Numbered from the stretch's first letter, positions 16,874-55,115 are shown. The stretch: DNA of 64,000 nucleotides from Kudoa neothunni (GCA_964304625.1 OZ199840.1:4378490-4442489), one strand, 5' to 3'. Translations and numbers: made by a program. The notes: generated by a model from the sequence alone, not told the origin.

Positions 16874-19339
16874 TCAATATTGAGGGACGTCCATGTGGCT
16901 TTTCAACCAGTAGAAAATGGAAAAATAGGCATTATCAGGAAGAGTTCTATCGTCTTCCATGTGGGCCATAATTGAGTTGGTGATTTGATGATTGTTGGTT
17001 TTATTATAAATTAGAATTTTGGTGTATTTCCGAACGGCATCGTTCACATGGTGATTATCAAGTAGAAGTTGAATGAATTGAATTGGGTTGGTTTCTATCA
17101 GGATATCCATGGCAATCACAATGAGACTTGGATATTGATGGCAGTAGCCAAGTAGATGAGTGCCGATTACCCGTCTTTTAGGAAGCAACCCACATTGATA
17201 CAGTTGTTGCAGTTGAAACACATCATTGAATTTGACCATCAAATCGATTGTGGTTTCATAAAGGAAATTTTCCACGGTGATGTTGAAGCGCGATAGTCGA
17301 GAGATTAAATGTAGCAAGATGTTTTTGAGTTTATAGTTTTTTTTCAATTTTTCCGCGCGAACTCCAATACACATTATCAGCCATTAGCGGTAGAAACACA
17401 GCGGCGAAAAGATTTTCTTGACGAATCTGAGATTTGACATAGTTGAGTGTGGGGATGGTTGGAGGAGGTCGGTTCTTTTTGTCCGATACAGAGACGAAGT
17501 GGAGGAGGGAGAACTAGGATAAGGTGACACACTGGAATCGGTGCTAACGTAATAGCAACTATCAATGCTAGTAGCGACATGATTCACAATTTTCTCCCCA
17601 ATATTTATCTCCATAATCAATAGCAGCAATATTACACACAACCACCGTATCCAGCAGTCGTCTAGCAGTGTCCAAAGTGCAATCTTTCAACACGAGAGTC
17701 TCGTGGGATAAGTTGAAGGATGTGTTTTTGGGAGTCGGAGCGACGCTGTATCAGCTGTATTACAGTGGGTTGGTGAGACGGGATACAATCGCGTATAAAA
17801 TAGTTCACGTTGAACATCAACAACCACATAGTTCCATTTGAGGTGTTCAGTATGAGATTGGGCTGCAAAAACAATATGTGATCTTGTTCAGCAAAATAAT
17901 TGCCTTCGGTTTCACACAGCTGGCATTGATCTTGTATTTGTGGCTCCTAAAAATTTCATTTAGCTCATGTAGCAACCAGGCAAAAGCTATTTTCACGGAC
18001 AAATTTAGGCAAAAAATATTTAACTTCATATTAACAAATAAAAATTAAATATTAGTCCGGAAAATAACTTTATATTAAAATAACAATAAAGAATTATTGT
18101 TATTGGAAATAATTACACCATTATGATTATTTTGAATAAAAAGCAAATCAATAGGTTTTATAAAGAGATCATTAGAGTTGAGATTGGAGACGAGTGTCTT
18201 GTTGGCCTCATGCCCACCAAACACTATCGAATTATCATCATTCTCCCCCAGCAAACCATAACTCAGCATGAGAGATATATCGAATGAATAGATTAATCTC
18301 TTGGGTCCGAGACTCACATATATTAGATCATCGTCGAATAGAAAATTTATTCGATGTGAATTTGGCGCCAAAAATTCCATCGGATAGTGAAGTGTGAACG
18401 AGCACTACCTTGACATGAGGTGTTTGTTTCAAATAGTGATTTTTAGTATTTTTCTTGGAATAATGCTCACAAGTGGGCGCGGATTTTGACAAACAGCACA
18501 AATCCACGATTTTATACAAATAAATCAGTCCATCATCCACTCCATACACAAACAGAAACAATATCTTGTAGATAACGGCCAATCTAATGTTTTTGGATGA
18601 GAGATTGGTGTATTTGGTGCTGAGAGAAGAAGTCGCCAAAGATTTGTTTCCGTTAGTCGGCAATACACTCGGTTTAACTAACTGAAATGTGCGCCGGGTT
18701 TCCAACTTGGAATTTTCCTTGAATAGAAACATATGAATTTGACTGTGTTGACCTACCATCAACAGTGGATAGTGAACCTGGTCACAATACAACTGTTGCC
18801 ATTCGCATTCCACAGAAGTTTTGTCCAACAATTTGAGCGTCATTTGTGGGCCCAAACTATACAATTCAATGCCACAATTGGTCACAAACACTATGTGAGT
18901 GGAATCCAACCAAAAAAAAATTGTTGATAATATTTTTTTTCGATGAACTCGGTTGAAAAAATAACTGTTGTCTCTGGCCAAAAAATCAATATTATCGCTT
19001 GAAGTTCACCAAAAATTCCATACCTGCTCACTTAATGTCACCATCACAAATTCCACATAATATGATGATCTTTGTATGGCTACAATATCGTAATGAGGAG
19101 ATATTTTCACTGAAGTAATTATGGCATTCCCTGGTATCTCTATATTCCATAAATCTATGTTGGATGGTGTTTTTTGCAGTCAGTTGTGTTCTATTGAGTT
19201 TGATCACGCAAAAACACAAACTTTTGAGTCAACTCATCGTAGTAGATCGAACTGTTTGGTTCGTTGAATTTGAACCCCAAGTTTCTCTCGGTGCAATTTT
19301 ACATAACCGTTAGTGAGTAGGTCTTTTTTCCTCGTACAT
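16874..19339 (-). CDS. RMC1: Regulator of MON1-CCZ1 (Mic1/C18orf8), divergent, multi-exon with apparent frameshifts
   Basis: Motif order matches RMC1: YYDELTQK, FFWLDSTHIVFVTNCGIELY, FLQPNLILNTSNGTMWLL, and a Mic1 C-terminal region (SRFNITVENFLYETTIDLMVK...YPSLIVIAMDIL...LLDNHHVNDAVR). Confidence 0.8.
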
Positions 19340-34735: not shown

Positions 34736-35847
34736 TGAAAAATTTTAGTTACACACTAGCAGGAATATCAATTTTTCTTTCTTTTCCAATATACTATAGC
34801 TTATATAAAATTAAACAATTAAAAATGGGTTCGGACTTCGTATATTGTTATTTTTTACCGATGACATTATTAAAAACTATGCCAAAATATACCGAATGGC
34901 GCAATACCGAGATTTTATTGAATATTAAAATTATAGTTATCAAACAAAACGTTTTCAGTTATACCTTTTAATGAATATTTTAGACAATAAATAAACCTTT
35001 CTTACTTACTTATGGATTCTCTTCTTGCTATAATTTTTCTTGTTTTGCCTACAAAATTCAATGTGAAATTTAGTTTATCCTATAAAAGAAATGCAAATCT
35101 TATTCGGAGTCAGGAATTGTTGTCATAGATTATACCTTGATGCACAAACGTAATTCTGTTCTAACGAAATATCATAGATATTAATTTTTTGAAACATTGT
35201 TGTCTAAAATGAGAATATAGATCATCCATTAATTTTCTGAGTATCTATTTTAATTATTGACACTGTGCTTCTCAACTATCAATGATGGTTGAAGTTAAGT
35301 AGTTACTTAGATAAATAGTGTATTCAGTAACCATCAAGCCATGCCTAATGTTCACCAATTAAACCGGATATTAATTCTTACAGTTAAATTAATTATTGAT
35401 TACAACATGTTATACTACTTTTTCAATTATTAATAAAATTAGATATTTATGTATGGTAATTTTAATGGTAATTGTACCATTCATTGTTCGGATAAAATCA
35501 ATGCGGTTTTAGCGCTGTTTAATTTATTTCGATATAAATATAAATTTGTTGAGTAATTTCTTTTACTTTTTATCTTTAAAATAACATTAATTTAGAATAT
35601 TTTAGAATATATTTTGCTATGTGGAATAATTGATTTGTAATATAAACAATTTTACCTAATGAATACACTTATAATATTCCTATGAAAATTGATATGGTAC
35701 AAATCAATATATCAGAAAATAATTATCGTTATTAACTATTTTTATATTTCTTAATTCAATTTCCCCTTCACCCGAAAAGCTTGGATCATAATATGCCATT
35801 CATAAGCTCGAATTTAATCATTGATTACTATAATACTATTTATCACG

Positions 35848-38800
35848 ATGAAGGTTCAACTGCTGTTCTGTTTTTCTAGTATTAAATTACTTTTATATTA
35901 TTTATTTAATCAATATTAGTCTTTATTAAAGTATTATTTGCAAATGCAAGACAGACACATCCAGTAGCACCTGCGCCAGAGGCTACATTAACGTACCAGA
36001 TTGATTTTGAAGAAAATACCAAAAAATATACTTTTAAACATAAACTTGGGGGCACAAAGTATGTAGCTGGAAAAAAGTGCCGTATAATGATATCAAATGA
36101 GGCAGCAACAATTGTCACATCATCGGTCGCAGCTGCTTTCGTGGAAATCGCAAGTTGCCCTGGGCATGATGATACAAGTCAAACGACTGAATGTATCATC
36201 GCTTGTAATAGTGAAAATAGTAAAGTAGGGTACAATAAACTTTCACCGAGGACAAAATACATATACGTAAAAGATGGGGCAGAGACAACTAATGTTCTAG
36301 GAAACAATCATAAACAAGGTGGAAAAGTGTTTGGGTTGGCAACACGTAATGGGATAGAAATAATGTTAATTTATTAATGCATAAAATTTTAGCATTGATA
36401 GTAAATCCACAAGCAACAATATCTATTGATAATGATAAGCTAAAACTCTCAGCAAAAACTTGTACTCCAGTTAATTGCCCTATCTTTTACAATGATGCAA
36501 AATTTAATGAGGGTGCGAAGGTTGCAGAATGCGACACGGATAACACAGCTGGAGCTTTGGAATTTGACTTATTGATTCCTCATTATGAGATGAGGTGTGA
36601 GAATTATCCCAGCTTCTTTTACCATATGCCAAATACATATATGAAGACCAACATGGAAATTTATAAACCTCAATATTACGTTACCAAAAAGACAGGAGAT
36701 AATAATAAGTTATTAATTAAATTCACCAGTTCAATGCTATCATCGGAAATATGTGTGTTCAGTATTAAAGATGGACAAACTGCAGGCAATGATCAACAAT
36801 TTGAGTCCAAATGTGGAAATACAGCAGGAAAATGTTACGCACTTTGCAAAGACACTGAACTTACGGTAACTGAAGCAAAAGAAATCTACAAGGTCCTAAT
36901 TCAAACCAGAAATCATGACCTCACAAAAACTGCTGCTGATTTAGAGGGATTTCCTCAGAACAAATTTGGTATTTATAGCGCGAATAATATAATGTTATAA
37001 TATGTATTATTATAGCGATTGCTGAGAGTGGAGCAGGATTGCTGTCTTTATATACGAAAACTGGTGTAACTTTTGACGGGGGATTCTTAAAGACGGTTGG
37101 AACTGGAACTACTAAATTTGGTACTTGCACGCTCAAACATTATGCTGCCGACAAAATCAAAACTGCATCAACCAGTACAGAATGTACCGAGGGTACACGT
37201 GGTAATAGCGGAAACGCTTGTAAAACAGATTGTTCAAAGGTGGTGATTGAAGGACTTGCTGAGGGAAAACCGTATATTATCGAAATTGAATCTACTGGCA
37301 TCGAAAGTCCAACAGATTTTAAGGAGCAAATACTCATCTGGACGGGTATATATTTAATAATTCTAGAGTTCTTGAGTTAATAATTATTAAAGAAAAAATA
37401 AGCGATGAAAAAACTTTCCAAACAACAACATCCGCTAAAACGGAGTCAACAACCACTCTAACAGCTATTGGAGGACAAGGCGAAAATGATAAGAAAAATG
37501 AACCCAACTGTGAGTATTACATAAGTCCAACAGGAAAAAATACATTTTACGCTGCTACATGCACTGAAACAAACCCTTGTAGAGGAAGATGCAGAGAGTC
37601 AATAACCATTATTGACCTTGAGCCAAATACTTCCTATGATATTAAAGTTGTTGCTGACAAAGAATACAAAGAGCATGTTTATAAAAATGTTTCAACAAGT
37701 ATACTTCTCATGGAAATAATATATTATTTTTGATTAGATTTGGCAATCCTTACAATAACTCCAAAATATACCCAACAAGGTTTGGAGTTAAATGCACAAT
37801 TATCAAAAAAAGTTCCAGAAGCCATTTGTCATTATACAATTCAAGTCAAGAAAGCCGGCCAGTTCGAAAATGTTTATACATGCGAGAGGCCCGAGACCTC
37901 AGCAGTTGCCCCAACAGTCCCAGAGACTCTACCAAACACACCAACTGGATCCGAACCTAGCATCAATCCAGCAAGAATGAGTGTCATTCCATCTCATAAC
38001 CAACAAATGGAAAAAACAGGTTTAAAGCCTGCAAGAGCTGAGGTAACTCCAACTGATGACGCAGAAACAACAACTACTACTCCTGCTACCACAGCCGCCA
38101 CGGTGGAAATTCCTCAAAGTTCGGACATATGCACGTCATTTCCATTATGCAGTTCGATTGTATTCAATGATTATGATGCAAAAGAAGAATATAAGGTATT
38201 GGTTACTGCAGTTGGAAAATCTTCACCCAGTGAAATCACTTTAGTAGCCAGTAATTAATATTTTTTAGGATATAAGTATTAATATCATTAAATAGCTGCT
38301 CCAAAAGAAAATCCAGCAGATAGGGAAAAAACAATATTTATAACCATAACAAGGGATGGAGAAATATTCAATATAGAAAATACCCTTCCATCTAGTCTTT
38401 CTGAAAATTCGAAATGCAAATGGGAATTACGTAACTCCAGTGCCAAATCAATGGCCATAGTGAAAAAATGTATGGGTCCGAGTGACGTTGGATGCAAAAA
38501 GTTCCCAAAATGCAAATCTTTTAGAATAAGTGGGATAAAAGATGGTAATAGTTATCATTTGACTGTTTACAGCTCCAGAGATTCTTCCATTTACGGGACG
38601 ACTGTAATTGAACAAGGTATAACCTGGTTTATTTTGTAATATTGTAATTTACGAATCTTAGGTGCAAAGAGCAGCTCAAGGTTTGTTTAATTATTAAAAA
38701 ATCAGTTAATCTATTATTTAGTTCTAAAACCCTTATGATGTATGATTTGAAAAATAACACATGATTGAAATAAAATGATTTAGACTAATAGTGGTAGCGG

Positions 38801-38859
38801 TTGTTGGAGTTTTGATTGCCGGTGCAGTCGGCTTCATGATTTTCAAGAAGAAAAACTAG
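35848..38859 (+). CDS. Type-I surface protein A (about 871 aa, 10 exons) with Cys-stapled FN3-like modules
   Basis: Exons 35848-35878, 35920-36345, 36393-36968, 37016-37345, 37393-37698, 37738-38250, 38296-38616, 38662-38680, 38722-38739, 38784-38859 give one open frame. It has a signal peptide, an FN3 signature (LEPNTSYDIKVVA), and a TM followed by FKKKN*. Confidence 0.88.
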
Positions 38860-39114
38860 GGTTTACCATTTAAATAGATTCCATTATAAATTAATAAAAT
38901 ATCATAACAATATCTTCATTTAACCCAATAATATGTGATTGGTCACCTTACATCTTTATTTATTCTGAAGCCCCATTATTTTTAAATTCATATTTTTTCT
39001 AAAATACAATTTCAGAGTATAAAATTTAATGTTATCTTTAATTTCTAAACTAAATTAATTATGATCTAATAAAGTATGAAAATTTCTCCAAAAATGAATG
39101 TATTTAAAAATATT

Positions 39115-39118
<4 letters not shown>

Positions 39119-39150
<32 letters not shown>
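39119..39150. repeat. (AT)16 microsatellite
   Basis: Direct reading. Confidence 0.95.
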
Positions 39151-39153
<3 letters not shown>

Positions 39154-40299
39154 TGCATTTAAGAAAAATAAATAGGGCCGTTACACACTGTTTCCAAATT
39201 AATGAGGGTCTAGTTATATTTACGAAATTTTACTACTTGAAATAATGATACTAAAATGAAAATATTTAATATAGTTAAGAAGCAAACCGCTGTTTGCAAC
39301 AAAAATTATCCTATTGATCGCTCTACGAAAATATAGGGTTTCTTAATTGAACTCGGCATTTTTTTTGTTCTGATCAAAATTCGTGCTGACACATTAAAAT
39401 CTCTATAAACAAATATTTTTTAGGATTTTTATTTTAAAAGACGTATTCCAGCAGAAACCATGTACACTTACACTTTATGATTAAATTCATTTCGAGTACC
39501 TAGAAAAATTTTACTTACACTCTACGATAGGTCCGCTTTAAGTATTCTTATTTAAATTTTATTCTTAGAGTCTATATAACATCAAATGAGACGCTTTACG
39601 TTAATATAAAATGTAGGAAAAAAAGATCTTTTTAAAAAAATAAATGCAAAGCAAAAACATAAAAGAATATAAAAAATTGAATGTGGTTCTTTGTCACCCC
39701 AGAAAACAGGATTAGAAACAGAATTCTCTCATTCTATTAATCACATGTGGCGGAAACTAAACAAGCTCATTTGTTTCTAAGGATGAGTTTTCGCAGAGAA
39801 ATTATTCTAGAATATGACCTATAAAAATATTAAATTTAATGTTTTTTATTTCATTATTTTAAAAGGTAAGAAATTTGTTAATAATATTGTTTATTAACAA
39901 CATTTTTTTTAATCTAAGTGCTAGATGGATGATAATATTTAATTTATACAAAAATTGAATGAAAAAAAGTAATTTGTAAGCTTAAAACATTATGATAAAT
40001 CAAATATATACATAAATTTTACAATTAGTCTTAGTTGAAAATTAATATTATGGTAGCTTGAAAAGGATTTTAACGTTTAAGTATGAATTTTGGTTGGATC
40101 TAAAAATGTGCCTAGTTCAATTGAGAAACCCTATATTTTACATTAAGTCTTCCTTACTTTTTAATGCGAGAATCTATTTTAGTTTAATACCCAATCAATT
40201 GTCAAGGTAAATCAGAGCTTGTTCATTTTTGACACAAGCGAATATCAGTTTACATATATTTTTATTAATTCAGTCTGGCGCACTGGAGAATATTATTAG

Positions 40300-41944
40300 T
40301 AAATAAAACAAACACGATATTTCATAACTTTTCTTTAGTCCGAAAAAGTTACGCTATAGCAAGAAATTACGCTATATTGAGACATGCACATACGCAAACA
40401 AAGTTTTAATTTTATTAATAATAATCCGTCAAAATAAATTTCATTTCTAAAGATTATTATCAATTATTAACTTTTTTGGTAACTGTTATTTTAATTAATT
40501 TCAAATTATCCAATTACTAATTACACTTTAAGCACAGTTTAGGAGTCAATTTAGCAAATAACGCTCAATAATTACCACTAATAGTTTAGCGTTTTGATAA
40601 TATAAATTCATAATACTAAAAATACTTATATAGCTTTAATTAGGATAAAACGAAAATGTTAAAATGCTATGAGAATGGAGAAAGTTTCAATATTCTACAC
40701 TCCTGAATAACAACCGTTTATAATGATTTATTGTTAATTTGTTTTCATTATAATTCCATGCGAAAATATAATAAACATTTAAACGAAAGAAATGAATTCA
40801 CGTTCATATCCCTTCATAATGAAATATAGAAACCAGTGTTTAACAGGAGGATTATGTTGTTGACTTCACCATCATATATGCGATTAGAAGAAAAATTTCT
40901 TTATAATTTTGTAAAAAATTTTGATACGCACGAGCTAAGAAGAACATATAAGATTTTATAGTGCCGCTTTCGACGAAAAAATCTTAAAAACGCTAAAAAT
41001 AGGGGAGCCGCACGCTCCGCAATAACCAGATGATAACCTGTTGTTGGATGGCGACATGATTCCATGGAAACAGCTTTATGGCCTTACTGCGTAAATAATA
41101 CGTCTTCGTGGTTTTTATTCAATTATGTTGAATTTTTTAGAAAAATTATTTGTTTTTAGTCTACGTTATTACTTGAAAAATTATGATAATAACTAATCTT
41201 TTTGTGCATAAAACCTAATCTCCTTTTTAAACATTCGACAACTAACATTACATCGTGCGTATTTTGTTCCCATTATCAATATTGTATATTATGACTTGAA
41301 GAAAAAGTTTTAAGTATATTAAATTTTTGTTTTTTTTTCCAAACAATCTTTATTTATGGCAAAGAATTAAAAGATTCAATAAATAGCTAAATATTACAAA
41401 AATCACTCTCCAAGGATATTTTTAATTTATATATTCTTGAAATTACAATGAAAGATATTTCTTATCCTTTTTAGTTAAGTAAACTATAAAAGAATTCTAT
41501 ACGATAATAAAGCGACTTTATTTGATCAATTTATACTTGGACCAAACAGGGGCCCACTGAATCTTTGTGTAATTTTTTGAAAAATCTGATAAAAACATAC
41601 ATAAGATGAACAAATTTTTTTGACTCCTGTAAATATTATTTCATAAAATTTATGATATAATTTACGTAACGTTAATTTTGTGATATAGAATATCTCTATA
41701 ATTTCATAAGCATTTAATAAAATTTTGGACCAACATGGGGTCCACTAAATTTTCTATGGTTAAAAGGATTAAATTAAAAAATTGTAGTTGTGCGATAACA
41801 AGAACATCAACTTTTCCTACTTTTTTACATTTTATATATAATTAAACTATGAGAAAAGGGTTTCCGGTCCCATATATTATTATTTTCATTATCAAACATA
41901 GACTAAAATATAACGACGCATTACGTAAAGTTGAGAGTTTACTG
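40300..41944 (+). mobile_element. pogo/Tigger-type element (decayed left end, clear right end)
   Basis: Left subterminal region similar to 33935-34010; right end GGGTTTCCGGTCCC...TTACGTAAAGTTGAGAGTTTACTG|TA. Confidence 0.6.
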
Positions 41945-44041
41945 TATGTCTGAATATTGGAATCGTAAATAATATTCAGGTGGAATTAGTTTGGACTATA
42001 CTTAATTATTTCTGGCTCACCGCTTCATTCTTCGAGGTTAGAAATAATTAAATATAGCAGATTCTAAATAATAAAACCTGCAAGCATTTTGTAAGTAAAG
42101 GTTGCTGAGGTAAAAAATTTCCATTGCGCAAACATACATACTGTTTAATATTAAATTTTACCGTTCCAATAGCTTCTACCTTAAATATTTTATTCTCCAT
42201 TCATAAACAATTTGTACACGAGCCTATACTATAATTATGTTTGACATAATTCAAGGATTTTATTGTTAAATTTGGACTAATCAAACATATTCAATCGCGA
42301 TCCTTCTACTTAAAAATTCAAAAAAACTAAATTTACTTTGATTTTATATATAAGATGAGATTAGCATATTGCAGCCCATATACGTAGTAGGATCTCGGTA
42401 TTATGTGATTCGATTGAGCGTAATTTGAAACTTTTGGCGATAAAACCATATTTTCTTTATTTGTTTGCTTTTTAATGTAATAATAATCAGACTGATTTCT
42501 AATTCAATTGAATGACTCAAAAGTTTCATTCATGAATTTTGTGAATTACATATGTCTCATAAAATGTTTCTACATTCTATTAAAGTAAAAAATCAAAACT
42601 GATTAAACTAAGAAGAATAACGATATATTAATAAATTTATTTACAATTTACTTTAAAAAAATTGATAATCTATTTAAAATATTACTGTGGAATTAGTTGA
42701 GTTTAAAAATAGATATAAAATTTATAAAATCGACTTATATTTATTAATCCTAAAAAGTTGAACTATTAGGCGGATATTTCCGATTTTCATTTTTCATTTT
42801 TATGTGGATAAATATTCGTCACTGTTTAGATAACAAGAATTCAATCTAGTCAGTCAAGTCATTATTAAAATTTACATTAGTTTACCCCACAAAAATTAAT
42901 AATAAATCACAATAATTTCTTTGGTGATTTGTTATGTCGATAAATTGGAAATTGCTCCATCATTACGAAAGCAGACTACTTTTTCGAATGTAATAGGAAA
43001 AAATTAAGCTAATTTAATTTTAATGAAACGGGTTGAAAATAAAAACACGTTCAAGGTAACTTAATTATTGAAAATTTTAGCCCATTAAATTTTATAGCGC
43101 AAAACTTTACAATTAGTGCCATAAGTGATAAACAAAGAGTCAGCAATAAAAGAAAGAATAATTTTAATAAATTTCACAATGCTAAATGAGTGGATACATA
43201 AAATATAAGTATTGTTCTAGTCGGATTCGGTCAATAACTGTTTTTGATCTATTTCGAATTAATCGATAATTTTACCCTAAAACAACTAACCTGCGAGATA
43301 TTTTTTTACTGACTGTTTATTTTTGAGGAAGAAAACCGATCTACTTTCATCAATACTTGCATAGATATTCTAAATAATTTCAGCTAACATCGTCAATGTT
43401 CACGTCTCATGTTACGTTATTTTTCTTCGCAGTATCAATTTCATAAAAGGCTATTTCGATTTCACGTATCTTGATGCAAATTATCAAAAATTTTTTTAGC
43501 GTTTGATTACTTTTTCCGATAGGATAAAATCCATTTAGTATTTTGCAATAGCTTGCGTGCGCACCAACACATGAAGCGATCTTAGAAATTCTTCTCAGTT
43601 TCCCTCTAATAACTCATAAATATAATAGTAAAGAAAATTTTCGATCATTTATTTTATTTTTTCAACTTTTTATCAAATTAATCTCCGTATAATTAAAAAA
43701 AGTCTAATTTTTTCTAATTATCAAAATTAAAACGGAAATTTGATTTTAAATACTTTAAATAAAAAATTACAATTTATTTGCATTAATAATTATAGGTATC
43801 AAAATAATCTATAATTACATCATATTTATGATTAAAATCAAAAGTATTATTTTATCGTCTTAAAATTTGGAATTAATTTGGATATAAATATTTATGATTA
43901 TTTGATGGAAAAAGTAACTGAATTATTTAATATTTATTTAATCCTTAATTGGTCGAAATTGAATATATTTTGTAATCAGAGGAATTAGAGAATGGTCCTA
44001 ACTTTAACCTAATGATGGCGCGCATGGTGAGTATTTTAGAT

Positions 44042-44469
44042 CAGGGGTCGGTCACCTACGATCCACCATGCATTAATAGCATGAAAATTTTTCATAATAT
44101 CTGAAATACCAAAATTATTTTCAAGTTATTTCTAAATCATTTTTCTAAATGTTAATGTGATTTATAACATAACGTTAATACTATTTCTATAAAATTGTAA
44201 AATATTTTTAAAAAGACAGGTACAACTCATTTTGTTTGAAATCGTCCAATAAATTGTTCTGTCACAAGTTAAGCACGGGTCGATTACATTGGAAGTGAAA
44301 ATTATTAAAATATAATACTATCATTTGACGTACTTTTCTACTTTAAAAGAATCTTATAAATTCTTATATATTTTAATCTGAAATTTGTATGGATTAATTT
44401 TAATACGGGTCGTATCAGAGTTGGGGTATGTCTGTTCGGCCCATCACCCTAAAAGGTTGCCGACCCCTG
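44042..44469. mobile_element. hAT (Charlie-like) MITE
   Basis: TIR CAGGGGTCGG..ACCT and a perfect 8-bp TSD TTTTAGAT. Confidence 0.95.
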
Positions 44470-45502
44470 TTTTAGATGATATACAAAATTCTTCAACATT
44501 TATAAAGCTCATAATCTGTATTTGATTGTATTTAAGTTACATAGAGTATATATTAGTTTAGATAATAATTCAAAGAGAATTTCAGTAAGATTTTAATAAT
44601 TAATATTAAATTCTATTGAAAGATGTGGAAGTTTATGAAGTCGAAAATTTCTATAATGATAATAATTTAGGTCTAATAAAAATTTTTCATATAAAGTAAT
44701 AATGAAAATAAAAGTCGTCATTTTTGAAATAAATTAAAAATTTTAATTTCGATGGTTATTGAATCACAAAAATACAACGATAATGCGTAATTCAACATTT
44801 GTATATATTTTTAATTTATTCGAAAAATAATTTATCTTTCCAACGCATTAATATTCGCGTTTACGAGATTTTACAATTTTTGTTTAAAATATTTAAATAA
44901 TGGAGAATTTAATTATATATCTCAATATAAGTATTCATATCGATCTTAAATCAATTATACTTGTCTTTAATTAATTAAGCGTAAAAAATATATACTTTGA
45001 TCTGAAGGTGTTAAAATATATAATTTTGCGCAAGCACATATCATTGATGATGCGAGAGTTCTTTGTTATTACATTACAACTAAAGTTTGCAAATATTACG
45101 CGATATAAGTAATTCGCGTCATATCTTACGATATAAATTGCGAAGGATTTTACAAATTTTAGGCGGTAATCCTGTTTATGCACATTTAAGAATGATCTTT
45201 GAAATTCAACCAAACCCTTTCATTTCATTTCATTTCAAATTAAATTAATGATAAATAAACTTCCAATGAAACTTTGTATATATGAAAGATTAAAGATTTT
45301 TAATTTATACCGCGCAAGCGTGCGTGAGAAAAAGATTAATTTGAACAATGGAATTATATATCAAATTTCAACAAACTTTTTGCAGTTAATATCTAGGATA
45401 ATAAATATTCTTGACTAAAAATATTATGAATTATTAAAATACTGTATTTGTATCATATTTAGAATTAGAAATGTTGCATGCGCGGATTTTCTGTTTATTC
45501 CC

Positions 45503-46523
45503 ATGAATCTATACTTGACCAGTTTCGAAATCAATTCCATAGCTACAATTGTGCTTTTAAACGTACCAGCCGTTTTGGTGAAAATTGGGAGTGTAGATGG
45601 GGACGAATTAAGTAGAATTAAGGACGCATTTCTTGAGAAAGCTGGTATCAACGATAGATTTCTCTATCAATACATGTCTCTAACTTATAATCACTTGAAA
45701 AATGGAAAATACTACACTCTAGTGACATATATGTTCAATCATGCCAGTATTTCGATGAATATCTATTCGAAACTGTGCAATTATCAGGATCTAACAATTC
45801 TGTGTTAGGTTTTGAACACTTTTTTACGAATATGAGTATGTTTGTGCAAACTTCTTCCTATGTGCTACCTATCTATGGATTTCAGCAATGGATAATCTGC
45901 TATTTGGTTGGTGGCGTGGTTAGTGGTTTGAGCGCCATTCTAGAATTCAACTATAAGAACCAAAGTTTCAACAATTTAATGATACGGCTGAATTGTTGTT
46001 GAAGATTTTTGGAGTTCCAGTGGGGGTGGTGGATTTCTTGAAAAATACAAAATCGAGATTATTCGACAATTTCAACGGGTTTATTCCAATTGTTGGAGCT
46101 AGCGGTGGAGTCTCCGCTCTAACCGCACTTATATGTTGTCATTATTTGTTTCGATGTTTAAAACTTTTTTTTATTTACGGTAGAAATCCACTGAAAAGAA
46201 GTGATTGTTTGTAGATGTTTATGGTTTATTGGGCATGTGTTTTAGAGAAAACCACTCCTGATGTTGGTGATGATCCCCCTCGTCGTGGATTATTTGTAGG
46301 ATGGAACCTTTCGTATTACATGAATGGAGCTTTCACAATATTTAATACATTGAACTTTCTGAGAATCACCGTCCAAGGGTTGTTCACCGATCTCAAATAT
46401 GAACCCTCATTTTTTAAGGGGATCAACTATTTCCACACCCTCAAAGTGTCAAATAGTGCTCACTTTGGTGGTCTTTTATTTGGATTTTTCTACTACCTTA
46501 TCGCCAAGCCTAAATACATTTGA
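45503..46523 (+). CDS. Rhomboid intramembrane serine protease (PARL-like?), catalytic dyad intact; 5' end uncertain
   Basis: YTLVTYMFNHA|SFEHFFTNM, YLVGGVVSG, IVGASGG, SNSAHFGGLLFG. Frame breaks are resolved by GT-AG introns of 56-66 nt. Confidence 0.88.
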
Positions 46524-47949
46524 CTATTTCATTATGTTATCAAATTTTTTATTTTGTATACACTCACTTAGATAAATGCCTATTTTTATTAATATTGAGA
46601 CTTGGTTTGTTTTACTTAAACTAATTAAAACGTTTCATTTTACGCTTAAATTCGGAGTTTTTTGATGATTAAAAAATTGTCGACATTTCTATGGATGTTT
46701 CAGGTTTTGGTATCTCCCCCTTATTTCTATAACAATTGTGGGGGAGGATTAAGGCACTGTCTATTGACACGGAAGTTTTTAATCCAACATCGCAACTACG
46801 CAAGCGCAATACTCAATTTTAACCCCAGAAACTCCTATTTATAGTTTACCTATAAAGTTTATTTTTCTAGAATATGCTATATATAATTATTTTTGGCCCC
46901 TAGAAATGGCAGAGAAGGGCCAAAAATAATTAAATGCAGTCAAAACTATACCTACCTGGACATTATGACCGCGCCAATAGCCACTTCCGAGGATTAATTG
47001 GGAATCCGTAGAAACAAATAATGTAAAATTTACAAATTAAATTCAACCGATTATATTTAATTAAAAATTATAATTAATTATAACGTATCAAACTTTTCTA
47101 AGTTAAGTTTGCTCGATTAAACCATGGCATGGGAGTATGTTTGTCCAGCGCACGCGCAACACATCATTTGATGACTCCAATAGTTATTTTTCCCGCCTAA
47201 TTCAGCGCTTCCCAATTAAAACTGGACTGGCACCCCCCATTTTTAGACAAAACGAAATTCGCACCCCTTTGCATACGATAAGGTGTAACTGACTTAAAAT
47301 TGATCAAAAATTATTTTCAATTTTGATCGGATCTCGCTCCACCTGAGACCAATGTTCACACCCCCCCAGTTGGGAACCCCTGACCTAGATATTATTACAA
47401 GTTAAGCTAATTTATATTTATTAAATTTCAAAAAATAAATGAAAAATTAAAAAGTCGCTATAACGTATTTTCACGTAAATTTTACCGTTTCATTAAAATA
47501 TCTCACTAGAGTCTGAATTTCCTGTGTTTGTGTCTTAAATGCTATAAATTTCACCCTAAATCGCAAAGAATTATCCAATTCACGCTCTCCAATCTGGTTG
47601 GAATAAGTCTGACTAGATTATTGGTATTTATTTAGAAACTAACGATACTCAGGCTAATATTGATTTAGAAATTCACCATAAAATAACTAATATAGACATA
47701 AAACTAGAGCATGCAATTTTCGACGCATATTTTTTTGCAAATCGTCGGGTTTTATCGAAAAAAAATAAAAATTTTTGTAATTCGACTTTTAAATTTTTTT
47801 ATGTTAGAAAACAATTCATAATTTCAAAAAAATAAATTGTAGAATTCAAATTTTAATTATAATGGAACATTAAAATCGATTATGTAGAGAATTTTTAGGT
47901 CCCCACCGCAATAATTGATCATTTCTTTTCCAAATATATTTTGCCATCA

Positions 47950-48770
47950 TGAGGAACTCCTTTCGGCATCAATGAAGGAAGCTGGTAACATCAATATATC
48001 TTGACAAGGTCTCGAAAGAATTGGACAAGCATTCCACACTTTATTTTAGGAATCAATTTTTGAGGGTCGAGTTGAATCTTTTATCGTTTTACATAACATG
48101 TAGTACTTATTATTAATCCCTATCTTCGCTTTGCCATCTAAATCTAAAAAATAATAAAGTTAATCAATATTTAATTTATCAATAGTAATTGGAGTGTATG
48201 GATCAATATATTTCATAGTTTGAAAAATTTAAAGAAAAGGAAAGGTTTCCTTAAATTTAAGAGTATTGGTTGATTAATTTATTCATTTGCGGCAAAACAC
48301 AAATTTTCTCTCTTAAATATTGAATTGTTTCAAGATTCAAATGGAGCAAAGCCAATAATATCTTTATGATTTTTGATCAAATTATCTCCTTTAATATAAA
48401 GTCATCGTTTATCTAATCCAAAATCCGTGATGTAAAATTCTCGCTTGTTTCTATTAATTTTGAGAGATCATAAAACACAGTAAAAGCATCAATTAAAAAT
48501 TTTGATGATAACTTAAGCATATTAAGTCTATCAGATTGCAGTTTCAAAAATTCGTTAAGTCCTTTGCAATAGTTACGGACCGGTGAATCCTCCCTCACTG
48601 GTTTCGAAATCGTTCCATTCTACCAAGTAATTAGTCAATTCACGTCGTTTTTTCCCATTTTCAAACGTTCCTTTCCGACGAAAGCCAATTTTTTCGATGA
48701 ATAAAAAATATAAACCGGTCATTTTCATCCAATTCGACGGTCTAAATCGATCAAAATCTATTTTAATCAA
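47950..48770 (-). pseudogene. hAT transposase remnant
   Basis: WNACPILSRPCQDILMLPASFIDAERSSS matches the hAT C-terminal dimerisation motif. Confidence 0.6.
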
Positions 48771-48800
48771 AAATTACATACCCTACATATAACTCATTAA

Positions 48801-49110
48801 CCCTCGTGGGACCAACTGGGGTCATTGTGACCTCAATTTGGATAGTTTAACTTTTTTCGCATATTGAATTACATGAGAGGGTTAAAAAATTATGGAATCC
48901 TTAATTATAGTCTGTAATTGATAATTATAAGGTTATGAAGAAAAATTGTGTGTATACGGATTTAAATATTTTACTTTAATAAGCGATGTGCTCGCTGCTT
49001 CATTTAATGTAGTTGTTACGAATTGATATAAAAATAATAAATATTATAAAGAAAAATAATGACATTAATTTTGATTCAAAATGTTATAGCATTATTAGAA
49101 AACGTTCAAT
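48801..49110 (+). mobile_element. Solo left end of a piggyBac-type element
   Basis: TTAA|CCCTCGTGGGACCAACTG; about 310 bp colinear with 53435-53740. Confidence 0.85.
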
Positions 49111-49360
49111 AAATTATTTATTCACAGGTTTAGCACGAGTTGATTACACTACACTGCAAGTGAAAATTATTTGATTATGATATTCTTGATTCAGCGTAAT
49201 TTTATAGTTTAAACAACTTTTATAAATTCTTATTTATAAAAATAAATTCTAAATTTGAATTAAGAATAATTTAAAATTTTAGTAGATTAATTTAATACGG
49301 CCGCATTAGGGTTAGGGTATGTCTGTTCAGCCCGTCATTCAAAAAGGTTGCCGACTGCTG
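49110..49360 (+). mobile_element. Right half of the hAT MITE family seen at 44042-44469
   Basis: Colinear with about 44250-44469, ending AAAAGGTTGCCGACTGCTG. Confidence 0.85.
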
Positions 49361-49863
49361 ACCTATACTATTTGTAATATAACGCAACCACATATCTATG
49401 ATTTTCAATATATTTATACATTAACCTAAATTTTAATCCGTTGATAAAAATATAACATAATGATTTCGTAATTGACCTGCTTAGAGTTTAAAGGCAAACT
49501 GATTTATCTCATTGAGTAAAAATTTTATTACCGGTTCGTTAATTATTGTATTAATTTAATAATTTACTAAAAATAATACTTTATTATATATTTTCTATCA
49601 TTATAATAGTCATTGACTCATTATTCATCCATATATAAAATAATTTAGAATTGCATAATAAATATAATTTTTCAGCATCAGATTAAACAAAGAATTAGTA
49701 ATTTTTTCATTTTTGTTTATTTAGCTGTCAATACCACTTTCTGTATTGAATTTATGAATTTGGCGAATTCCAAGTTACTTACATTCATATTTATTGATGG
49801 TTATAATCATATTAAATTAATCCGTATTGAATTGATGTATTTAATAAGACCTAAAAAATAAGA

Positions 49864-52127
49864 ATGCAGATGATTGCTTTGCTGTTGTTTACATTTTGCT
49901 GTTGCAGTAAATTTTAAAATTTGTTGCATTTAGGTTATATTAATTTAGTTCAGTCACATAAATATTATGTTGAGCGTGACCAAGAAAATTCAGAGGATCT
50001 AATCCATCTAAAACTTGAGGGGGTCTCAGGACAAAAATGTGAAGTGAAGCTACTGGACAAAAATGAACATTTCTATCATTATGTGCATAGCGGATCTGAT
50101 GAGATGAATACTCACATTATTCCTTGCAATGGAAGATACATCATTTCAACTGAAACCGCTGGTCCTATCTATTATGTGCAAATAAAATCAAAATCTGAAA
50201 TTGAAACTCTTAAAGTGGTTCATAGTAAGTCACTTTTGAGATTTCAGATTTAATCTTTCTGTAGCTACGGATAAAACACCTGAAACCCCATTTAAAATTA
50301 ATACAACTTCAATTGAATTCACAACAAAAAATATTTGCAGTCACCCTCAAACATGTAAATTAACTAGTGGAGATAAAATACTTGATAAATTCATTCCAAA
50401 AAATGACACTGAATGTAACGCTGAAAATAAACTCACTGGGTTCTTCGACTCCATGAGTGGTGACTCAATCAAACTCTCTTGTGGAAGTAACCAACCAAAT
50501 ATTCACTTATTTAAACGAAACAACAAAATTATGGAATTTAATCCCTTGGAAAAATATCCCTATCATATCGAAAAAATTACTGGTGACAATACAAAAATAA
50601 AAATAGTTTTTGATGAAGATATTCCGGATAAAATTTGCAAATTTGAAATCAGAAAAAAAGGCAGTGGAAACCATGCGTCAACTTGTTCTGTTTTAGGGAG
50701 TGGAGATTGTTACCAATTATGCAGAGAAGTCACAATGAGTTTTACCTTTGTTGAACAAACAGACAAGGACTTTGACGTTAAGGTGTCATTTAGGAATTAC
50801 GCGGCGGTAGAAAAAACGTTAAGAAGTAATTACTTATTTGATGTAATACAAATTTAAATCAAATTAGTTGGAAAAGGTAAACTTACAATCAAACCAACTG
50901 AAAACACTGCAGTTATCTCTGTTGGAGAATTAAAAGAGGGTTTAACTACTCCAACATGCACAATTGAGTTGAGGAAGCAGGATTACCCTAATTTGCTTAT
51001 TGATACAATGTGCGATGCAGCATTAAAAACACCCTGCCCAACAAATTGCCCCGATACCGCAACCATTCATGGACTAGAACCTAATACAAAATATATTGTT
51101 AAAGTATTGTATGAAAATACTGGGAAAACCGAATCTTTTATTGCAGAAACCCTTTTTTCCACAGGTGCTTCATAGAATAAATAATTCCTATAAACATAAT
51201 TTAGTTAGTTATAATATGACTAAAACTCCTAAGATTAAATCTTATTACGAACACACCAAGATAACTATAGCACCAAATGTGACTCAATTTGATGGAGTTT
51301 ATTGTAAAATTCTACAAAAACTGAGTGGCCAAAATGAATTCATTTCATCCGAATGTGAGGAATCTGTTGACTGTTATGGTTTATGTGGATCGACAATGAC
51401 GATCAAAAATCTTTTATCTGATACCGAATACCAACTCAAATACCTTTTTGATAAGTATATTGGTGACCTTCCCACAAACGTGGTTACTGTTAAAACAAGT
51501 AAAAATTATTAATTAAATATGAATAACGTTGATAAAGGTGCTAAACTTGAAAAACTAAATGTAACATACACGTGGAAAGATGCTGATTTAATTGTGACAA
51601 CAGGTTTGGAATCTTTAGAAGAGCATATATGTGACTTTATATTTGTGGACCCAATGGGTGGAGATTTACAATTCCTATATGGTGTATATGATAAAACAAC
51701 TGACTGGGAAGAGAAATGCAACAAAGAGATCACATTTTACAACGCTCAATCCTATAAACAGGGATCAATGATAGTTAAAGCAAGATATTTTAGCGAGCCA
51801 GTCATAATTGACCTTTCAGCACCAATATCTGATCCACAAAATGTGGTTGTTACATCAGGATCTCATGAGCATGGTAAATTATATTGATTATGACTAACAC
51901 AATTCATTAATGATTATTTTAGGGACCTCTGATGGGTAAGTTGGTATTAAATTCATTAATTTCTTAATGCATTAACTTTATTTAGTGCTTCTACCGGTGG
52001 AACAAAAGTTATGTAATTTCGATTGTTTAATGATTGAATTCAAATATTATTTAGGCTGATTGTTGGTGGAATCATTATAGCTTTGTTGATATGTGCTATT
52101 GGTTTCATAGTATTCAAGAAAAAATAG
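49864..52127 (+). CDS. Type-I surface protein B (about 639 aa, 9 exons), paralogue of protein A
   Basis: Exons 49864-49906, 49949-50224, 50265-50825, 50868-51164, 51205-51498, 51538-51873, 51923-51935, 51986-52012, 52055-52127 give one open frame. It has GLEPNTKYIVKV, a TGDN.K..I.F......IC.F.I block shared with A, and a TM followed by FKKK*. Confidence 0.88.
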
Positions 52128-53090: not shown

Positions 53091-53434
53091 AAAATAACAT
53101 TAAAATTAATTCTTATTATAAGCGAGCATGTGCATATATTAAATGTTCCCTCTTAAGCATATGAAAATCGATTAGTTGTTAGTTCAGTGAAATTTTAAAA
53201 CAAATATAATTCTAATATGATTGTATGAGAAATTTTTAAATCATGTTTGAAAAAATTTAATCTGAATCTTTTATTTTTACACCAAGTTTTTCTAAAGAAC
53301 GAAAAATCCTTGCACCAAGAATACCGAAATCTTCCATTATGATTAACATAATTTCTGTGTAAAACATCACGGTTTTCATAGAAATGTTGAAAAGTAGAAA
53401 TGGTATGAAAAAATAAATTTAACTTGATCGTTAA

Positions 53435-55115
53435 CCCTCGTGGGACCAACTGTGGTCATTTGTGGCCCAATTTCGATAATTCAACGTTTTCTCACATATC
53501 ACATTAAGTAAGAGGGTCCAAAGCTTCTGAACTCCTTAATTAGAGTTTGTGATTAATAATTGTAGAGTTATAACGAAAAAAATATATTTACTGATTTAAA
53601 TATTATACTTTTGATATGCGATGTGCCCGCTACTTTATTTAAAGATAGTTATTATTAATTGATATAAAAATAATAAATATTATTAAGATAGCTAATGACA
53701 TTAATTTATTAAAAAATATTATAGCATTACTAAAAGCGCAATGAACGCGTTTTTAAGTTTCATGCGAATGGATTCCGTTCGACTATGGTGAGTATCCAGA
53801 GTTTGTCCTTTAGATTAGTCTTCAACATAAAATGCAATGAATATAGGCATACATTGAATTTCTACTTTAACTCTCTAAGGCAGTGTTTCCTAACATGGGA
53901 CGTGGAAATGTTTAACGATTAATGAACCACTACGGTGGGATGTGGAAAATCCTGAGTATTGTTGTGGCAGGATAATGGTGGGAAATTTGGACATTATGAT
54001 GACTTTGGAGTTAATATCGGTTATTTTTAAGTGACGATTAACATCTTAAAAACGCAAAAAGCGATTCCTCATTATATAAAAATTAATAATAGTTTTTAAC
54101 TTGTCCTTTACCAAAATAGAATCAGAATCGTTTAATCCTTTTTTGACTAAATCTCCTGTAATGTTGATTAATTTTGTATTTATACTCTTTATTATCCGTT
54201 TATTAGCCCCGTATACACAGAAATATATCCCAATGAAGGTTAGATTACATTGGTTTCATTTGATGCTGTTTTTGACGGAATGTAGAACTAAAGATATTAA
54301 TTTTTAAGGTCCATCGATAAATTAAGTTAAATCTAATCGAATACATTTTAATGAAAAAAAGTATATATTAATTGCTTTCAAATTTTAATGTGATATGGAG
54401 CTTTATTCAATATTATAAATAGTTCAAATTGAAAAAATTAATACTTTTGAATAAGGTGGACTCGACAGAAAAATGATTGAGATATATTGCCCTAAAGATT
54501 ATGGGGTCTTTTGGACCCCAAAAGTCCTTGGAGGGTGGTCGTTTCTGCTGACCTTACAGGGTAAAATCAAAAAGGAGAGTCAACAAAATCCCCCATCAAC
54601 TTTAAAATATATTTATTTTTTGTTAAAAAAAAGTTTTATAATCTCCACATCTGAATAATTATATGTTAGTTGGGAAGGAAACTTCCATTTAGTAAACAAA
54701 AATGAAAGTATAATCTAGAGTTGCATACATGTATTAACGAGCTCCATTGGAGGTTGTAGTCATCAAATGCTTGGGGTCTGGTGTTCAAAGTTCCCATTGA
54801 AACTCAACTAAATATTCTATTATTATCGCTAATGCCTTGAAAATGTTATAAAATAACGGTGTCTATATATTTAAGACATTATATCCATTAATATACAAGT
54901 AACATGGGTACTGGTATATGAAGCGATGTAAGCATTTAATAGTAACTTAGCAATGGCAGAAATCTTATCACCTAATTTTTTTAAAACATATAATAAGCAT
55001 AACAACCAGAAGGAGTAAAAGAATTGAACTGTTTAAAAAAATGAAAACGTTCTGGGGCCAAAAATGACCCAAGTTGGTTCCCCGCGTAAGTTTTTTTATG
55101 TCGGCCCTTCGAGGG
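53435..55115 (+). mobile_element. Non-autonomous piggyBac-type element with nested fragments
   Basis: TTAA|CCCTCG...CGAGGG|TTAG; inner inverted repeat ACCAACT..GGTCATTT.TGGCCC with asymmetric spacer; nested hAT start at 53881 and an end of the 32453 family at about 54503-54535. Confidence 0.85.

What the first reader, a model, noticed from the sequence alone, without database searches (positions are those of the whole stretch)
35848..52127. Candidate new diversifying surface-protein family: FN3-like modules with a disulfide-stapled hypervariable loop
Seen: two paralogues share an identical plan (signal exon, tandem ~100-aa modules, micro-exons, TM, 3-4-aa basic tail) but very little sequence identity. 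Most modules read C-x(14-25)-C-x(n)-C-x(3-5)-C followed by an FN3-type L.P.T.Y.V.V strand. The inner loop n is 11, 6, 11, 5, 82, 7 in A and 7, 7, 5 in B. Two B modules keep only the outer Cys pair, which supports nested C1-C4/C2-C3 bonds. Known: canonical FN3 lacks disulfides, and I do not recognise this pattern. Inference: a scaffold-plus-variable-loop display system (variant antigen, adhesin or allorecognition receptor) with no signalling tail.
Basis: partly seen in the sequence, partly recalled or inferred. Interest (0 to 1): 0.85.

Follow-up and report, generated by a model that had tools for sequence, protein, structure and literature searches.

The report
Kudoa FN3-like surface-protein megafamily
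The two genes are real members of a very large, apparently undescribed family (at least about 240 copies) of membrane-anchored proteins built from disulfide-bonded fibronectin-III-like modules, in what is very probably the tuna muscle parasite Kudoa neothunni; they may form a variable parasite surface coat, but expression could not be tested.

Summary
Two + strand genes, A (35848-38859, 10 exons, 871 aa) and B (49864-52127, 9 exons, 644 aa), share one plan: signal-peptide exon, domain exons bounded by phase-1 introns of 27-50 nt, two micro-exons, a transmembrane exon and a KKKN or KKK tail.

The canonical four-cysteine module folds as FN3 (AlphaFold2 pLDDT 90; TM 0.6-0.75 to monobodies and tenascin).

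The main correction is scale. The genome has at least 238 exon-3 copies, probably 300-500, in tandem arrays on all three chromosomes. About 97% have open frames. The genome is very probably Kudoa neothunni (Myxozoa).

The "hypervariable loop" claim is only partly right. The C2-C3 loop evolves near neutrally (dN/dS 0.84-0.97) in alternate modules of A-type genes and is strongly conserved (0.02-0.25) in the others. No region exceeds 1.

Paralogues are mosaics, with a different nearest relative for different exons, which points to gene conversion.

Surface display and a variant-antigen role remain inferred, because no RNA data cover this organism. The nested disulfide pairing is unproven. Other first-stage notes of this scan flagged the same family elsewhere in this genome. 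I found no paper that describes it.

The parts
35848..35878 (+). Gene A exon 1: start codon and first part of the signal peptide (MKVQLLFCFS...)
   Evidence: Gene model. The following intron, 35879-35919, is GT..AG.
35920..36345 (+). Gene A exon 2: end of the signal peptide plus membrane-distal four-Cys module 1 (gaps 25/11/3). This is the most divergent module among paralogues.
   Evidence: C2-C3 loop dN/dS 0.84; median dN 0.43.
36393..36968 (+). Gene A exon 3: an Ig-like N' module (C-x4-C-x17-C-x21-C) followed by a canonical four-Cys FN3-like module (19/6/3)
   Evidence: 8 invariant Cys; AF2 pLDDT 74; tandem FN3 / Ig-like sandwich. At least 150 homologous exons in the genome.
37016..37345 (+). 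Gene A exon 4: four-Cys module (18/11/3). Its C2-C3 loop varies in sequence and length; one paralogue carries a Ser-rich insert of about 40 aa.
   Evidence: loop dN/dS 0.97. Only 83.5% nt identity to the nearest paralogue, while exon 6 is 100%.
37393..37698 (+). Gene A exon 5: four-Cys module (16/5/3). It is the most conserved module and has a sub-threshold Pfam fn3 hit.
   Evidence: fn3 16.1 bits against a cut-off of 25; loop dN/dS 0.04.
37738..38250 (+). Gene A exon 6: four-Cys module whose C2-C3 loop carries an 82-aa insert rich in Thr, Pro and Ser (about 37884-38129)
   Evidence: T+P+S 42%. The insert is present but variable across A-type paralogues.
38296..38616 (+). Gene A exon 7: membrane-proximal four-Cys module (17/7/5)
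38662..38739 (+). Gene A: two juxtamembrane micro-exons (38662-38680 and 38722-38739) encoding a Ser-rich stalk (..AKSSSSSKTLM)
   Evidence: All bounding introns are GT..AG and 41-45 nt long.
38784..38859 (+). Gene A last exon: TM helix, KKKN tail and stop codon
49864..49906 (+). Gene B exon 1: signal-peptide exon (MQMIALLLFTFCCC)
49934..50224 (+). Gene B exon 2: two-Cys module (Cys 28 residues apart)
50265..50825 (+). Gene B exon 3: N' module plus four-Cys module (15/7/3)
   Evidence: About 20 close and about 10 intermediate paralogues.
50868..51164 (+). Gene B exon 4: four-Cys module (17/7/3). This is the module that was folded.
   Evidence: pLDDT 90.2, pTM 0.79; FN3 matches, TM 0.6-0.75; fn3 17.8 bits.
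51205..51498 (+). Gene B exon 5: four-Cys module (16/5/3) with a conserved loop
   Evidence: loop dN/dS 0.02.
51538..51873 (+). Gene B exon 6: two-Cys module (Cys 28 residues apart)
51923..52012 (+). Gene B: two micro-exons (51923-51935 and 51986-52012) encoding a Gly/Ser/Thr stalk (..GTSDGASTGGTKVM)
   Evidence: The second donor was placed at 52013 to restore the frame.
52055..52127 (+). Gene B last exon: TM helix, KKK tail and stop codon
   Evidence: Conserved in 11 of 12 B-type paralogues.

Best explanation
A and B belong to a large, lineage-restricted family of type I membrane glycoproteins in a myxozoan parasite, very probably Kudoa neothunni. The following is shown. Each protein has a signal peptide and 6-7 tandem beta-sandwich modules, mostly one per phase-1 exon. 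Most modules are FN3 folds in which four invariant Cys staple the C-to-E segment. A Ser/Thr-rich stalk, one TM helix and a tail of 2-4 basic residues follow. The family has at least 238 copies, mostly in head-to-tail arrays. It is kept open and spliceable under overall purifying selection, and copies exchange exon-sized pieces by gene conversion or unequal crossing-over. The following is inferred. The proteins sit on the parasite surface as a coat or adhesin layer. Alternate modules, above all the membrane-distal one, expose fast-evolving loops that meet host or partner molecules. Duplication and recombination produce a repertoire that serves antigenic diversity or varied binding. With no cytoplasmic domain, the proteins would act by binding or shielding, not by signalling.
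For: Gene models and plan.
Fold: FN3, TM 0.6-0.75; exon 3 is two Ig/FN3-like sandwiches; fibronectin E-F motif, E 8.8e-5.
Copy number and arrays: (238 places, 70% with a neighbour within 20 kb; runs of same-strand copies 4-10 kb apart on C2 at 9.79-9.87 Mb and C1 at 16.44-16.56 Mb).
Functional constraint: stops in only 8 of 265 exon-3 matches; 172 of 176 junctions keep phase-1 GT..AG introns; exon dN/dS 0.16-0.49; TM exon and basic tail kept in 11 of 12 B-type genes.
Variability: loops with dN/dS 0.84-0.97 in A exons 2, 4 and 6, plus variable BC-like and FG-like stretches.
Mosaicism: 18 of 23 A-type and 9 of 12 B-type genes have different nearest paralogues for different exons; A against its neighbour copy is 100% identical in exon 6 and 83.5% in exon 4.
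Lineage restriction: only 26 hits in 1.84 billion representative proteins. Twenty-four are short unnamed ENA/Logan ORF fragments, and the 21 that matched held DNA other than their own contig are 25-75% identical to it. The other two are sea-star cubilin-like proteins that match through CUB domains.
Organism: together with PMC12239612.
Against: There is no expression, localisation or polymorphism data. The RNA runs offered contained none of this organism, and the genome paper says few transcriptomic reads mapped. No region has dN/dS above 1, so the fast loops may simply be unconstrained. Kudoa plasmodia live inside muscle fibres, where pressure from antibodies is not obvious (my own knowledge). 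The gene count rests on exon-3 matches, not on full gene models.
Confidence: 0.5

Rival explanations
1. The proteins are cell-cell adhesion or self/non-self recognition molecules acting between the parasite's own cells (myxozoans have cell-in-cell stages and fusing plasmodia). This would be analogous to cnidarian allorecognition proteins, and diversity would serve homophilic specificity.
For: The architecture, tandem Ig/FN3-like modules on a type I anchor, is that of metazoan adhesion molecules. Another cnidarian, Hydractinia, has a clustered family of sequence-divergent Ig-like surface proteins used for allorecognition (PMC9546547). The authors of PMC11792419 speculate that Sphaerospora molnari uses Ig-superfamily genes for non-self recognition.
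Against: There is no cytoplasmic tail to couple recognition to a response, whereas several Alr proteins carry ITAM or ITIM motifs. Hundreds of loci spread over three chromosomes differ from a few highly polymorphic loci. Nothing was tested here.
Confidence: 0.2
2. The proteins are stage-specific structural coat or matrix proteins, for example of spore valves or the sporoplasm surface. Many copies would exist for dosage or stage-specific use, not for variation.
For: Overall purifying selection, conserved modules (exons 3 and 5) and homogenised membrane-proximal exons fit a structural role. Mucin-like inserts and stalks are common in coat proteins.
Against: Dosage families are usually kept similar. 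Here paralogues diverge to 20-25% identity between subfamilies, and the distal modules are the least conserved.
Confidence: 0.15
3. The proteins are surface-bound or shed decoys for host cytokines or other host ligands, mimicking class I or II cytokine-receptor binding modules.
For: The best Foldseek matches to the exon-3 two-domain model are cytokine-receptor D1-D2 pairs such as IFNAR1, the common gamma chain and gp130 (E 3.5e-5 to 1e-3). These receptors also have disulfide-bonded FN3 domains.
Against: TM scores are only 0.24-0.33 and plain tandem FN3 pairs score the same. There is no WSxWS motif, and the Cys positions differ from any solved FN3 found.
Confidence: 0.05
4. The copies are not working genes. 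They would be a repeat family spread by transposons or segmental duplication that still looks coding because the copies are young.
For: 45.6% of the K. neothunni assembly is annotated as repeats. Gene B is flanked by two same-orientation copies of a roughly 280-nt element that begins TTAACCC, and a piggyBac-type transposase fragment lies at 8601-9017.
Against: Copies are old (median dS about 1, amino-acid identity down to about 20%) yet about 97% of exon-3 frames are open. Splice sites and phases are kept. dN/dS is 0.16-0.49. All cysteines are invariant.
Confidence: 0.05

Closest known systems
Fibronectin type III domain (Pfam PF00041) in multi-FN3 type I membrane proteins
   Same: The seven-strand sandwich is shared (TM 0.6-0.75 to 10Fn3 monobodies and tenascin). 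So is the E-F 'TI.gLeP.T.Y.v.V' motif, which matches fibronectin itself. Domain exons are phase 1-1.
   Different: Four invariant Cys. No regular C' strand; a stapled C-to-E segment takes its place. Pfam scores of 16-18 bits fall below the 25-bit cut-off. There is no cytoplasmic domain, and the family has hundreds of paralogues.
Hydractinia Alr allorecognition family (PMC9546547)
   Same: Both are cnidarian. Both are clustered families of type I surface proteins whose Ig-like domains escape sequence models and were recognised by structure prediction. Both have invariant cysteines and highly diverse sequences.
   Different: [quoted passage not shown] The 41 genes lie in one complex, and several have tails with ITAM or ITIM motifs. 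The Kudoa family is FN3-type, has at least 238 copies on three chromosomes and has no tail. Homology was not tested.
Variant surface protein families of parasites (Giardia VSPs; VSP-, RIFIN- and STEVOR-like genes reported in Sphaerospora molnari, bioRxiv 10.64898/2026.02.11.705288)
   Same: These are large arrays of Cys-containing type I membrane proteins with a very short basic tail in a parasite. One of the reported cases is also a myxozoan.
   Different: VSPs are CXXC-rich (more than 10% Cys) and not FN3. A and B have 3.3-3.7% Cys, no CXXC motif and a modular FN3 build. Switching or exclusive expression is unknown here.
Class I/II cytokine-receptor homology modules
   Same: Tandem FN3 domains with conserved disulfides. 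They are the top Foldseek matches to exon 3.
   Different: No WSxWS motif, different Cys positions, no signalling tail, and low TM scores (0.24-0.33).
Engineered monobodies, adnectins and centyrins
   Same: The same scaffold, with diversity placed in loops at one pole. They are the best structural matches.
   Different: They are artificial, and this is an analogy only. The natural loops here are disulfide-stapled.

Membership tests
FN3 superfamily (fold level) | Seven-strand beta sandwich superposable on solved FN3 domains | tested here: met
   AF2 of B exon 4 gave pLDDT 90.2 and pTM 0.79. Foldseek against the PDB gave TM 0.6-0.75 and rmsd 2.6-3.5 A to monobodies, tenascin (1ten) and fibronectin. 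ESM Atlas fn3 clusters gave TM 0.69-0.73.
Pfam fn3 (PF00041) | Score at or above the 25-bit gathering cut-off | tested here: not met
   Best scores are 16.1 bits (A exon 5) and 17.8 bits (B exon 4). Most exons have no hit.
FN3 superfamily (sequence level) | Conserved E-F strand motif with the tyrosine corner | tested here: met
   T, I, L, T and Y are invariant in 30 modules. The module profile matches fibronectin 'ATITGLEPGTEYTIYVIA' with E 8.8e-5 against PDB sequences.
CUB domain (for the N' module of exon 3) | CUB jelly-roll fold and a Pfam CUB match | tested here: not met
   Sea-star cubilin-like proteins matched the profile by many weak stretches that fall in CUB domains. However, hhalign probability is 5%, no Pfam CUB hit was found, and the model aligns to Ig-like sandwiches at Z 6-7.7.
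Class I cytokine receptors | WSxWS motif and a cytoplasmic signalling region | tested here: not met
   No WSxWS motif in A or B. The tails are KKKN and KKK.
Giardia-type VSP | More than 10% Cys with many CXXC motifs | tested here: not met
   3.3% and 3.7% Cys, and no CXXC motif. The criteria are as quoted.
Variant (contingency) surface antigen system | Large, clustered, recombining gene repertoire | tested here: met
   At least 238 copies, 70% of them clustered. Nearest neighbours differ between exons.
Variant (contingency) surface antigen system | Surface expression with switching or mutually exclusive expression | not testable with these tools
   No RNA run contained the organism.
Variant (contingency) surface antigen system | Positive selection (dN/dS above 1) on exposed parts | tested here: not met
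   The highest pooled loop value is 0.97, in A exon 4. Site models were not run, and recombination would confound them.
Hydractinia Alr IgSF | [quoted passage not shown] | tested here: not met
   The modules are FN3 or C-type-like sandwiches and there is no tail.

The most novel reading that the evidence does not exclude
A metazoan parasite (a cnidarian) runs an antigenic-variation-type system built on an FN3 scaffold. Hundreds of recombining genes would have CDR-like variable loops on the membrane-distal and alternate modules, one or a few would be expressed per parasite clone, and new mosaics would arise by gene conversion. This would be a natural counterpart of engineered monobody libraries and a new route to immune evasion in animals.
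Probability: 0.2. Interest if true: 0.9.

Novelty: new variant of a known kind. Interest (0 to 1): 0.7.

Why it matters
Myxozoans are economically important fish parasites, and how they deal with the host is largely unknown. The published K. neothunni annotation has only 5,316 protein predictions, made from protein hints.6% of the genome repeats. A family of at least 238 intact genes would be several percent of the gene set, and it may be largely missing from the annotation or masked as repeats. It would be the largest candidate host-interface family in this parasite. It gives a concrete target set for expression, localisation and diagnostic or vaccine work. It also shows FN3 domains used as a naturally diversified, disulfide-stapled display scaffold.

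Tried and rejected
- **Nematode origin.** I suspected a nematode from the 47-nt introns, three chromosomes and about 40 Mb. No SL1 spliced leader was found, and SPT6, the mitochondrial genome and the telomere point to Myxozoa instead.
- **CUB homology of the N' module.** Rejected.
- **Composite piggyBac around gene B.** Only two same-orientation copies of the TTAACCC... end were found, and no inverted partner in the window.
- **ER-retrieval KKxx reading of the tail.** KKKN fits the motif, but B-type tails (FKKK, LTKK) do not.
- **Expression test.** Three RNA runs held no reads of this organism, so this was no test.
- **ESM Atlas feature search.** No usable hit.
- **Contig C4.** Rfam and ARAGORN found nothing. 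This fits a myxozoan mitochondrial genome without tRNA genes.
- **Joined spliced proteins.** These were not sent to any search or fold tool.


Full report
**Anatomy.**
The region lies in AT-rich eukaryotic DNA with coding blocks in shifting frames. Joining the blocks through GT..AG introns gives two complete + strand genes.
- Gene A runs from 35848 to 38859, with 10 exons, introns of 39-47 nt, and 871 aa.
- Gene B runs from 49864 to 52127, with 9 exons, introns of 27-50 nt, and 644 aa.

In both genes a short first exon begins a signal peptide. Each large exon is bounded by phase-1 introns and carries one beta-sandwich module; exon 3 carries two. Two micro-exons encode a Ser/Thr/Gly-rich stalk. 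The last exon encodes a strongly hydrophobic helix followed by KKKN (A) or KKK (B) and a stop. A and B are collinear at 24% identity.

I joined exons only inside scripts, for bookkeeping and a local A-versus-B comparison. 

**Fold.**
Pfam gives only sub-threshold fn3 hits: 16.1 and 17.8 bits against a cut-off of 25. I aligned 30 canonical modules from the window and from paralogues. Invariant positions are C30, C48, C56, C60, T65, I66, L69, T73 and Y75. With this alignment AlphaFold2 models B exon 4 at pLDDT 90.2 and pTM 0.79.

The model has strands A, A', B, C, E, F and G but no regular C' strand. C1 lies in strand B, and C2-C4 lie in the segment between C and E. Foldseek places the model among FN3 domains, including monobodies, tenascin 1ten and fibronectin (TM 0.6-0.75, rmsd 2.6-3.5 A). 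The ESM Atlas gives fn3 clusters at TM 0.69-0.73. The module profile also matches the fibronectin E-F strands in PDB sequences (E 8.8e-5). No solved FN3 found there shares the four-Cys pattern.

Exon 3 of A, modelled with 22 homologues, reaches pLDDT 74 and forms two sandwiches. The pair resembles tandem FN3 and cytokine-receptor D1-D2 pairs, but only loosely (E 3.5e-5, TM about 0.3). Taken alone, the first half aligns to Ig-like sandwiches at Z 6-7.7. A match of that half to sea-star cubilin CUB domains rests on many weak stretches and fails hhalign (probability 5%), so I do not call it CUB.

**Disulfides.**
- For the nested pairing: the two-Cys modules of B keep a Cys in strand B and one 3-4 residues before strand E, which are C1-like and C4-like positions. 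Residues 47 and 55, next to C2 and C3, appear as isolated bridges in the model.
- Against certainty: from FN3 topology (my reasoning), C1 at the start of strand B lies nearer to C2 than to C4. C1-C2/C3-C4 is therefore not excluded.
- In the N' module, fragments from other species lose Cys 1 and Cys 3 together and keep Cys 2 and Cys 4, which suggests 1-3 and 2-4 pairs.

**Scale.**
The main correction to the finding is the size of the family.
- Exon 3 of A finds 150 scored matches in the window's own genome, out of 506 first-look candidates. The weakest still has E 1.8e-48.
- Exon 3 of B finds about 20 close copies, about 10 at 32-35% identity, and many at 21-28% identity that overlap the A-type set.
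- Merged, these make at least 238 distinct places. Seventy percent have a neighbour within 20 kb.
- Dense blocks lie on C3 at 0-1 Mb (26 places), C1 at 16-17 Mb (20 places) and C2 at 8-10.9 Mb (47 places), often as same-strand runs 4-10 kb apart.
- Only 8 of 265 matches contain stops.

The window sits at the edge of a mixed cluster. A 92%-identical copy of A's exon 3 lies about 6 kb beyond the window's end, and more distant members follow within about 80 kb.

In 40 paralogue loci the exon order is the same. Of 176 junctions, 172 keep a phase-1 GT..AG intron with a median length of 43 nt. Eleven of 12 B-type genes keep the TM exon and end 2-3 residues after it. Other first-stage notes of this scan (s1-690118, s1-687453) describe the same kind of family elsewhere in this genome. 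The stretch of s1-690118 coincides with my loci L027-L029.

**Evolution.**
- Whole-exon dN/dS is 0.16-0.49, which indicates purifying selection.
- The C2-C3 loop is not uniformly hypervariable. Its dN/dS is 0.84 in A exon 2, 0.25 in exon 3, 0.97 in exon 4, 0.04 in exon 5 and 0.89 in exon 6. In B exons 3-5 it is 0.55, 0.38 and 0.02.
- The entropy profiles show that, in the variable modules, the stretch after strand B and the stretch after strand F vary as much as the C2-C3 loop. By standard FN3 topology these loops lie at the N-terminal pole, which in module 1 is the membrane-distal tip. This last point is inference.
- Nothing exceeds 1, so relaxed constraint cannot be separated from diversifying selection with these data.
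- Genes are mosaics. Eighteen of 23 A-type and 9 of 12 B-type genes have different nearest paralogues for different exons.
- A and its neighbour copy are 100% identical over the 513 nt of exon 6 but 83.5% identical in exon 4, where both dN and dS are raised.
- Near-identical pairs are commoner in the membrane-proximal exons.

This pattern fits frequent gene conversion with a more homogenised stalk and older, more diverse distal and alternate modules.

**Organism.**
- The genome has three contigs of 17.15, 12.04 and 11.05 Mb plus one of 18.2 kb.
- The small contig carries a divergent COX1 fragment, reads open with TGA as a sense codon, and has no detectable tRNA genes.
- An intronless SPT6 gene in the window has cnidarians as its best named matches, at only 30-37% identity.
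- (TAAACC)n is found at a single chromosome end.

These features, together with about 30% GC and introns of about 45 nt, match the published Kudoa neothunni assembly from a yellowfin tuna sample. That assembly has three chromosomes, a circular mitochondrial genome, 30.4% GC, a median intron of 49 bp, and a (TAAACC)n telomere at one end (PMC12239612). The identification is very probable but indirect.

That paper does not mention this family. Two Sphaerospora molnari papers report other surface families, not this one.

**Distribution elsewhere.**
A profile of exon 3 found only 26 proteins among 1.84 billion representatives. Two are the sea-star cubilin-like proteins discussed above. The other 24 are unnamed ORF fragments of about 100-400 aa from ENA and Logan assemblies. 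Twenty-one of them matched DNA held here other than their own contig, at 25-75% identity, and they keep the family motifs, so they probably come from other species.

**Function.**
Shown: this is a large, intact, recombining family of type I membrane proteins with FN3-like, disulfide-stapled modules and no cytoplasmic domain. Inferred: it forms a parasite surface coat or adhesin repertoire whose variable modules face the host. The rival readings are parasite cell-cell recognition, stage-specific structural coat, host-ligand decoy and inert repeat. They are weighed in their own sections.

Expression could not be tested. The three RNA runs offered held no reads of this organism, and the DNA holder only confirmed presence and paralogue cross-mapping.

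**Verdict.**
Its scale was greatly underestimated, the "hypervariable loop" applies to specific modules only, and the functional reading is still a hypothesis. I rate it a new variant of a known kind, an FN3-based surface family, of fairly high interest.

Noticed in passing
window 921-5318 (-): An intronless 1466-aa SPT6 (transcription elongation factor) ORF. Its best named relatives are cnidarians at only 30-37% identity, and an unnamed Logan contig encodes a 53%-identical copy, presumably from a related species.
   Followed up: partly
window 8601-9017 (-): A fragment of a piggyBac-type transposase (Pfam DDE_Tnp_1_7, E 4e-21).
   Followed up: partly
window 48794-49071 and 53428-53707 (+): Two same-orientation copies, 78-86% identical in three ungapped blocks, of a roughly 280-nt element beginning TTAACCCTCGTGGGACC flank gene B. 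No inverted partner was found in the window, so a composite piggyBac is not supported by this check.
   Followed up: partly
window 45419-46520 (+): A multi-exon rhomboid-like gene lies between A and B, with three sub-threshold Pfam Rhomboid hits on consecutive ORF pieces.
   Followed up: no
window 16877-18981 (-): ORF pieces matching the N- and C-terminal domains of RMC1 (regulator of the MON1-CCZ1 complex).
   Followed up: no
window about 35740-35790, and upstream of A-type paralogues (L002-L030): A block of about 40 nt (CCGA.AAG...ATTCAT) some 60-100 nt upstream of the ATG is conserved among 29 A-type copies, while the rest of the upstream DNA is not. It may be a shared promoter or 5' UTR element.
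   Followed up: partly
G000 contig C4 (L059, first 10 kb of 18,219 bases): A probable mitochondrial genome with 43% GC, no tRNA genes detected and a very divergent COX1. Long ORFs appear only if TGA is read as a sense codon.
   Followed up: partly
L060 (Logan contig, 2166 nt): In a related organism the exon-2-like and exon-3-like parts lie in one 333-aa ORF. The intron between them is absent there, or the contig derives from spliced RNA.
   Followed up: no
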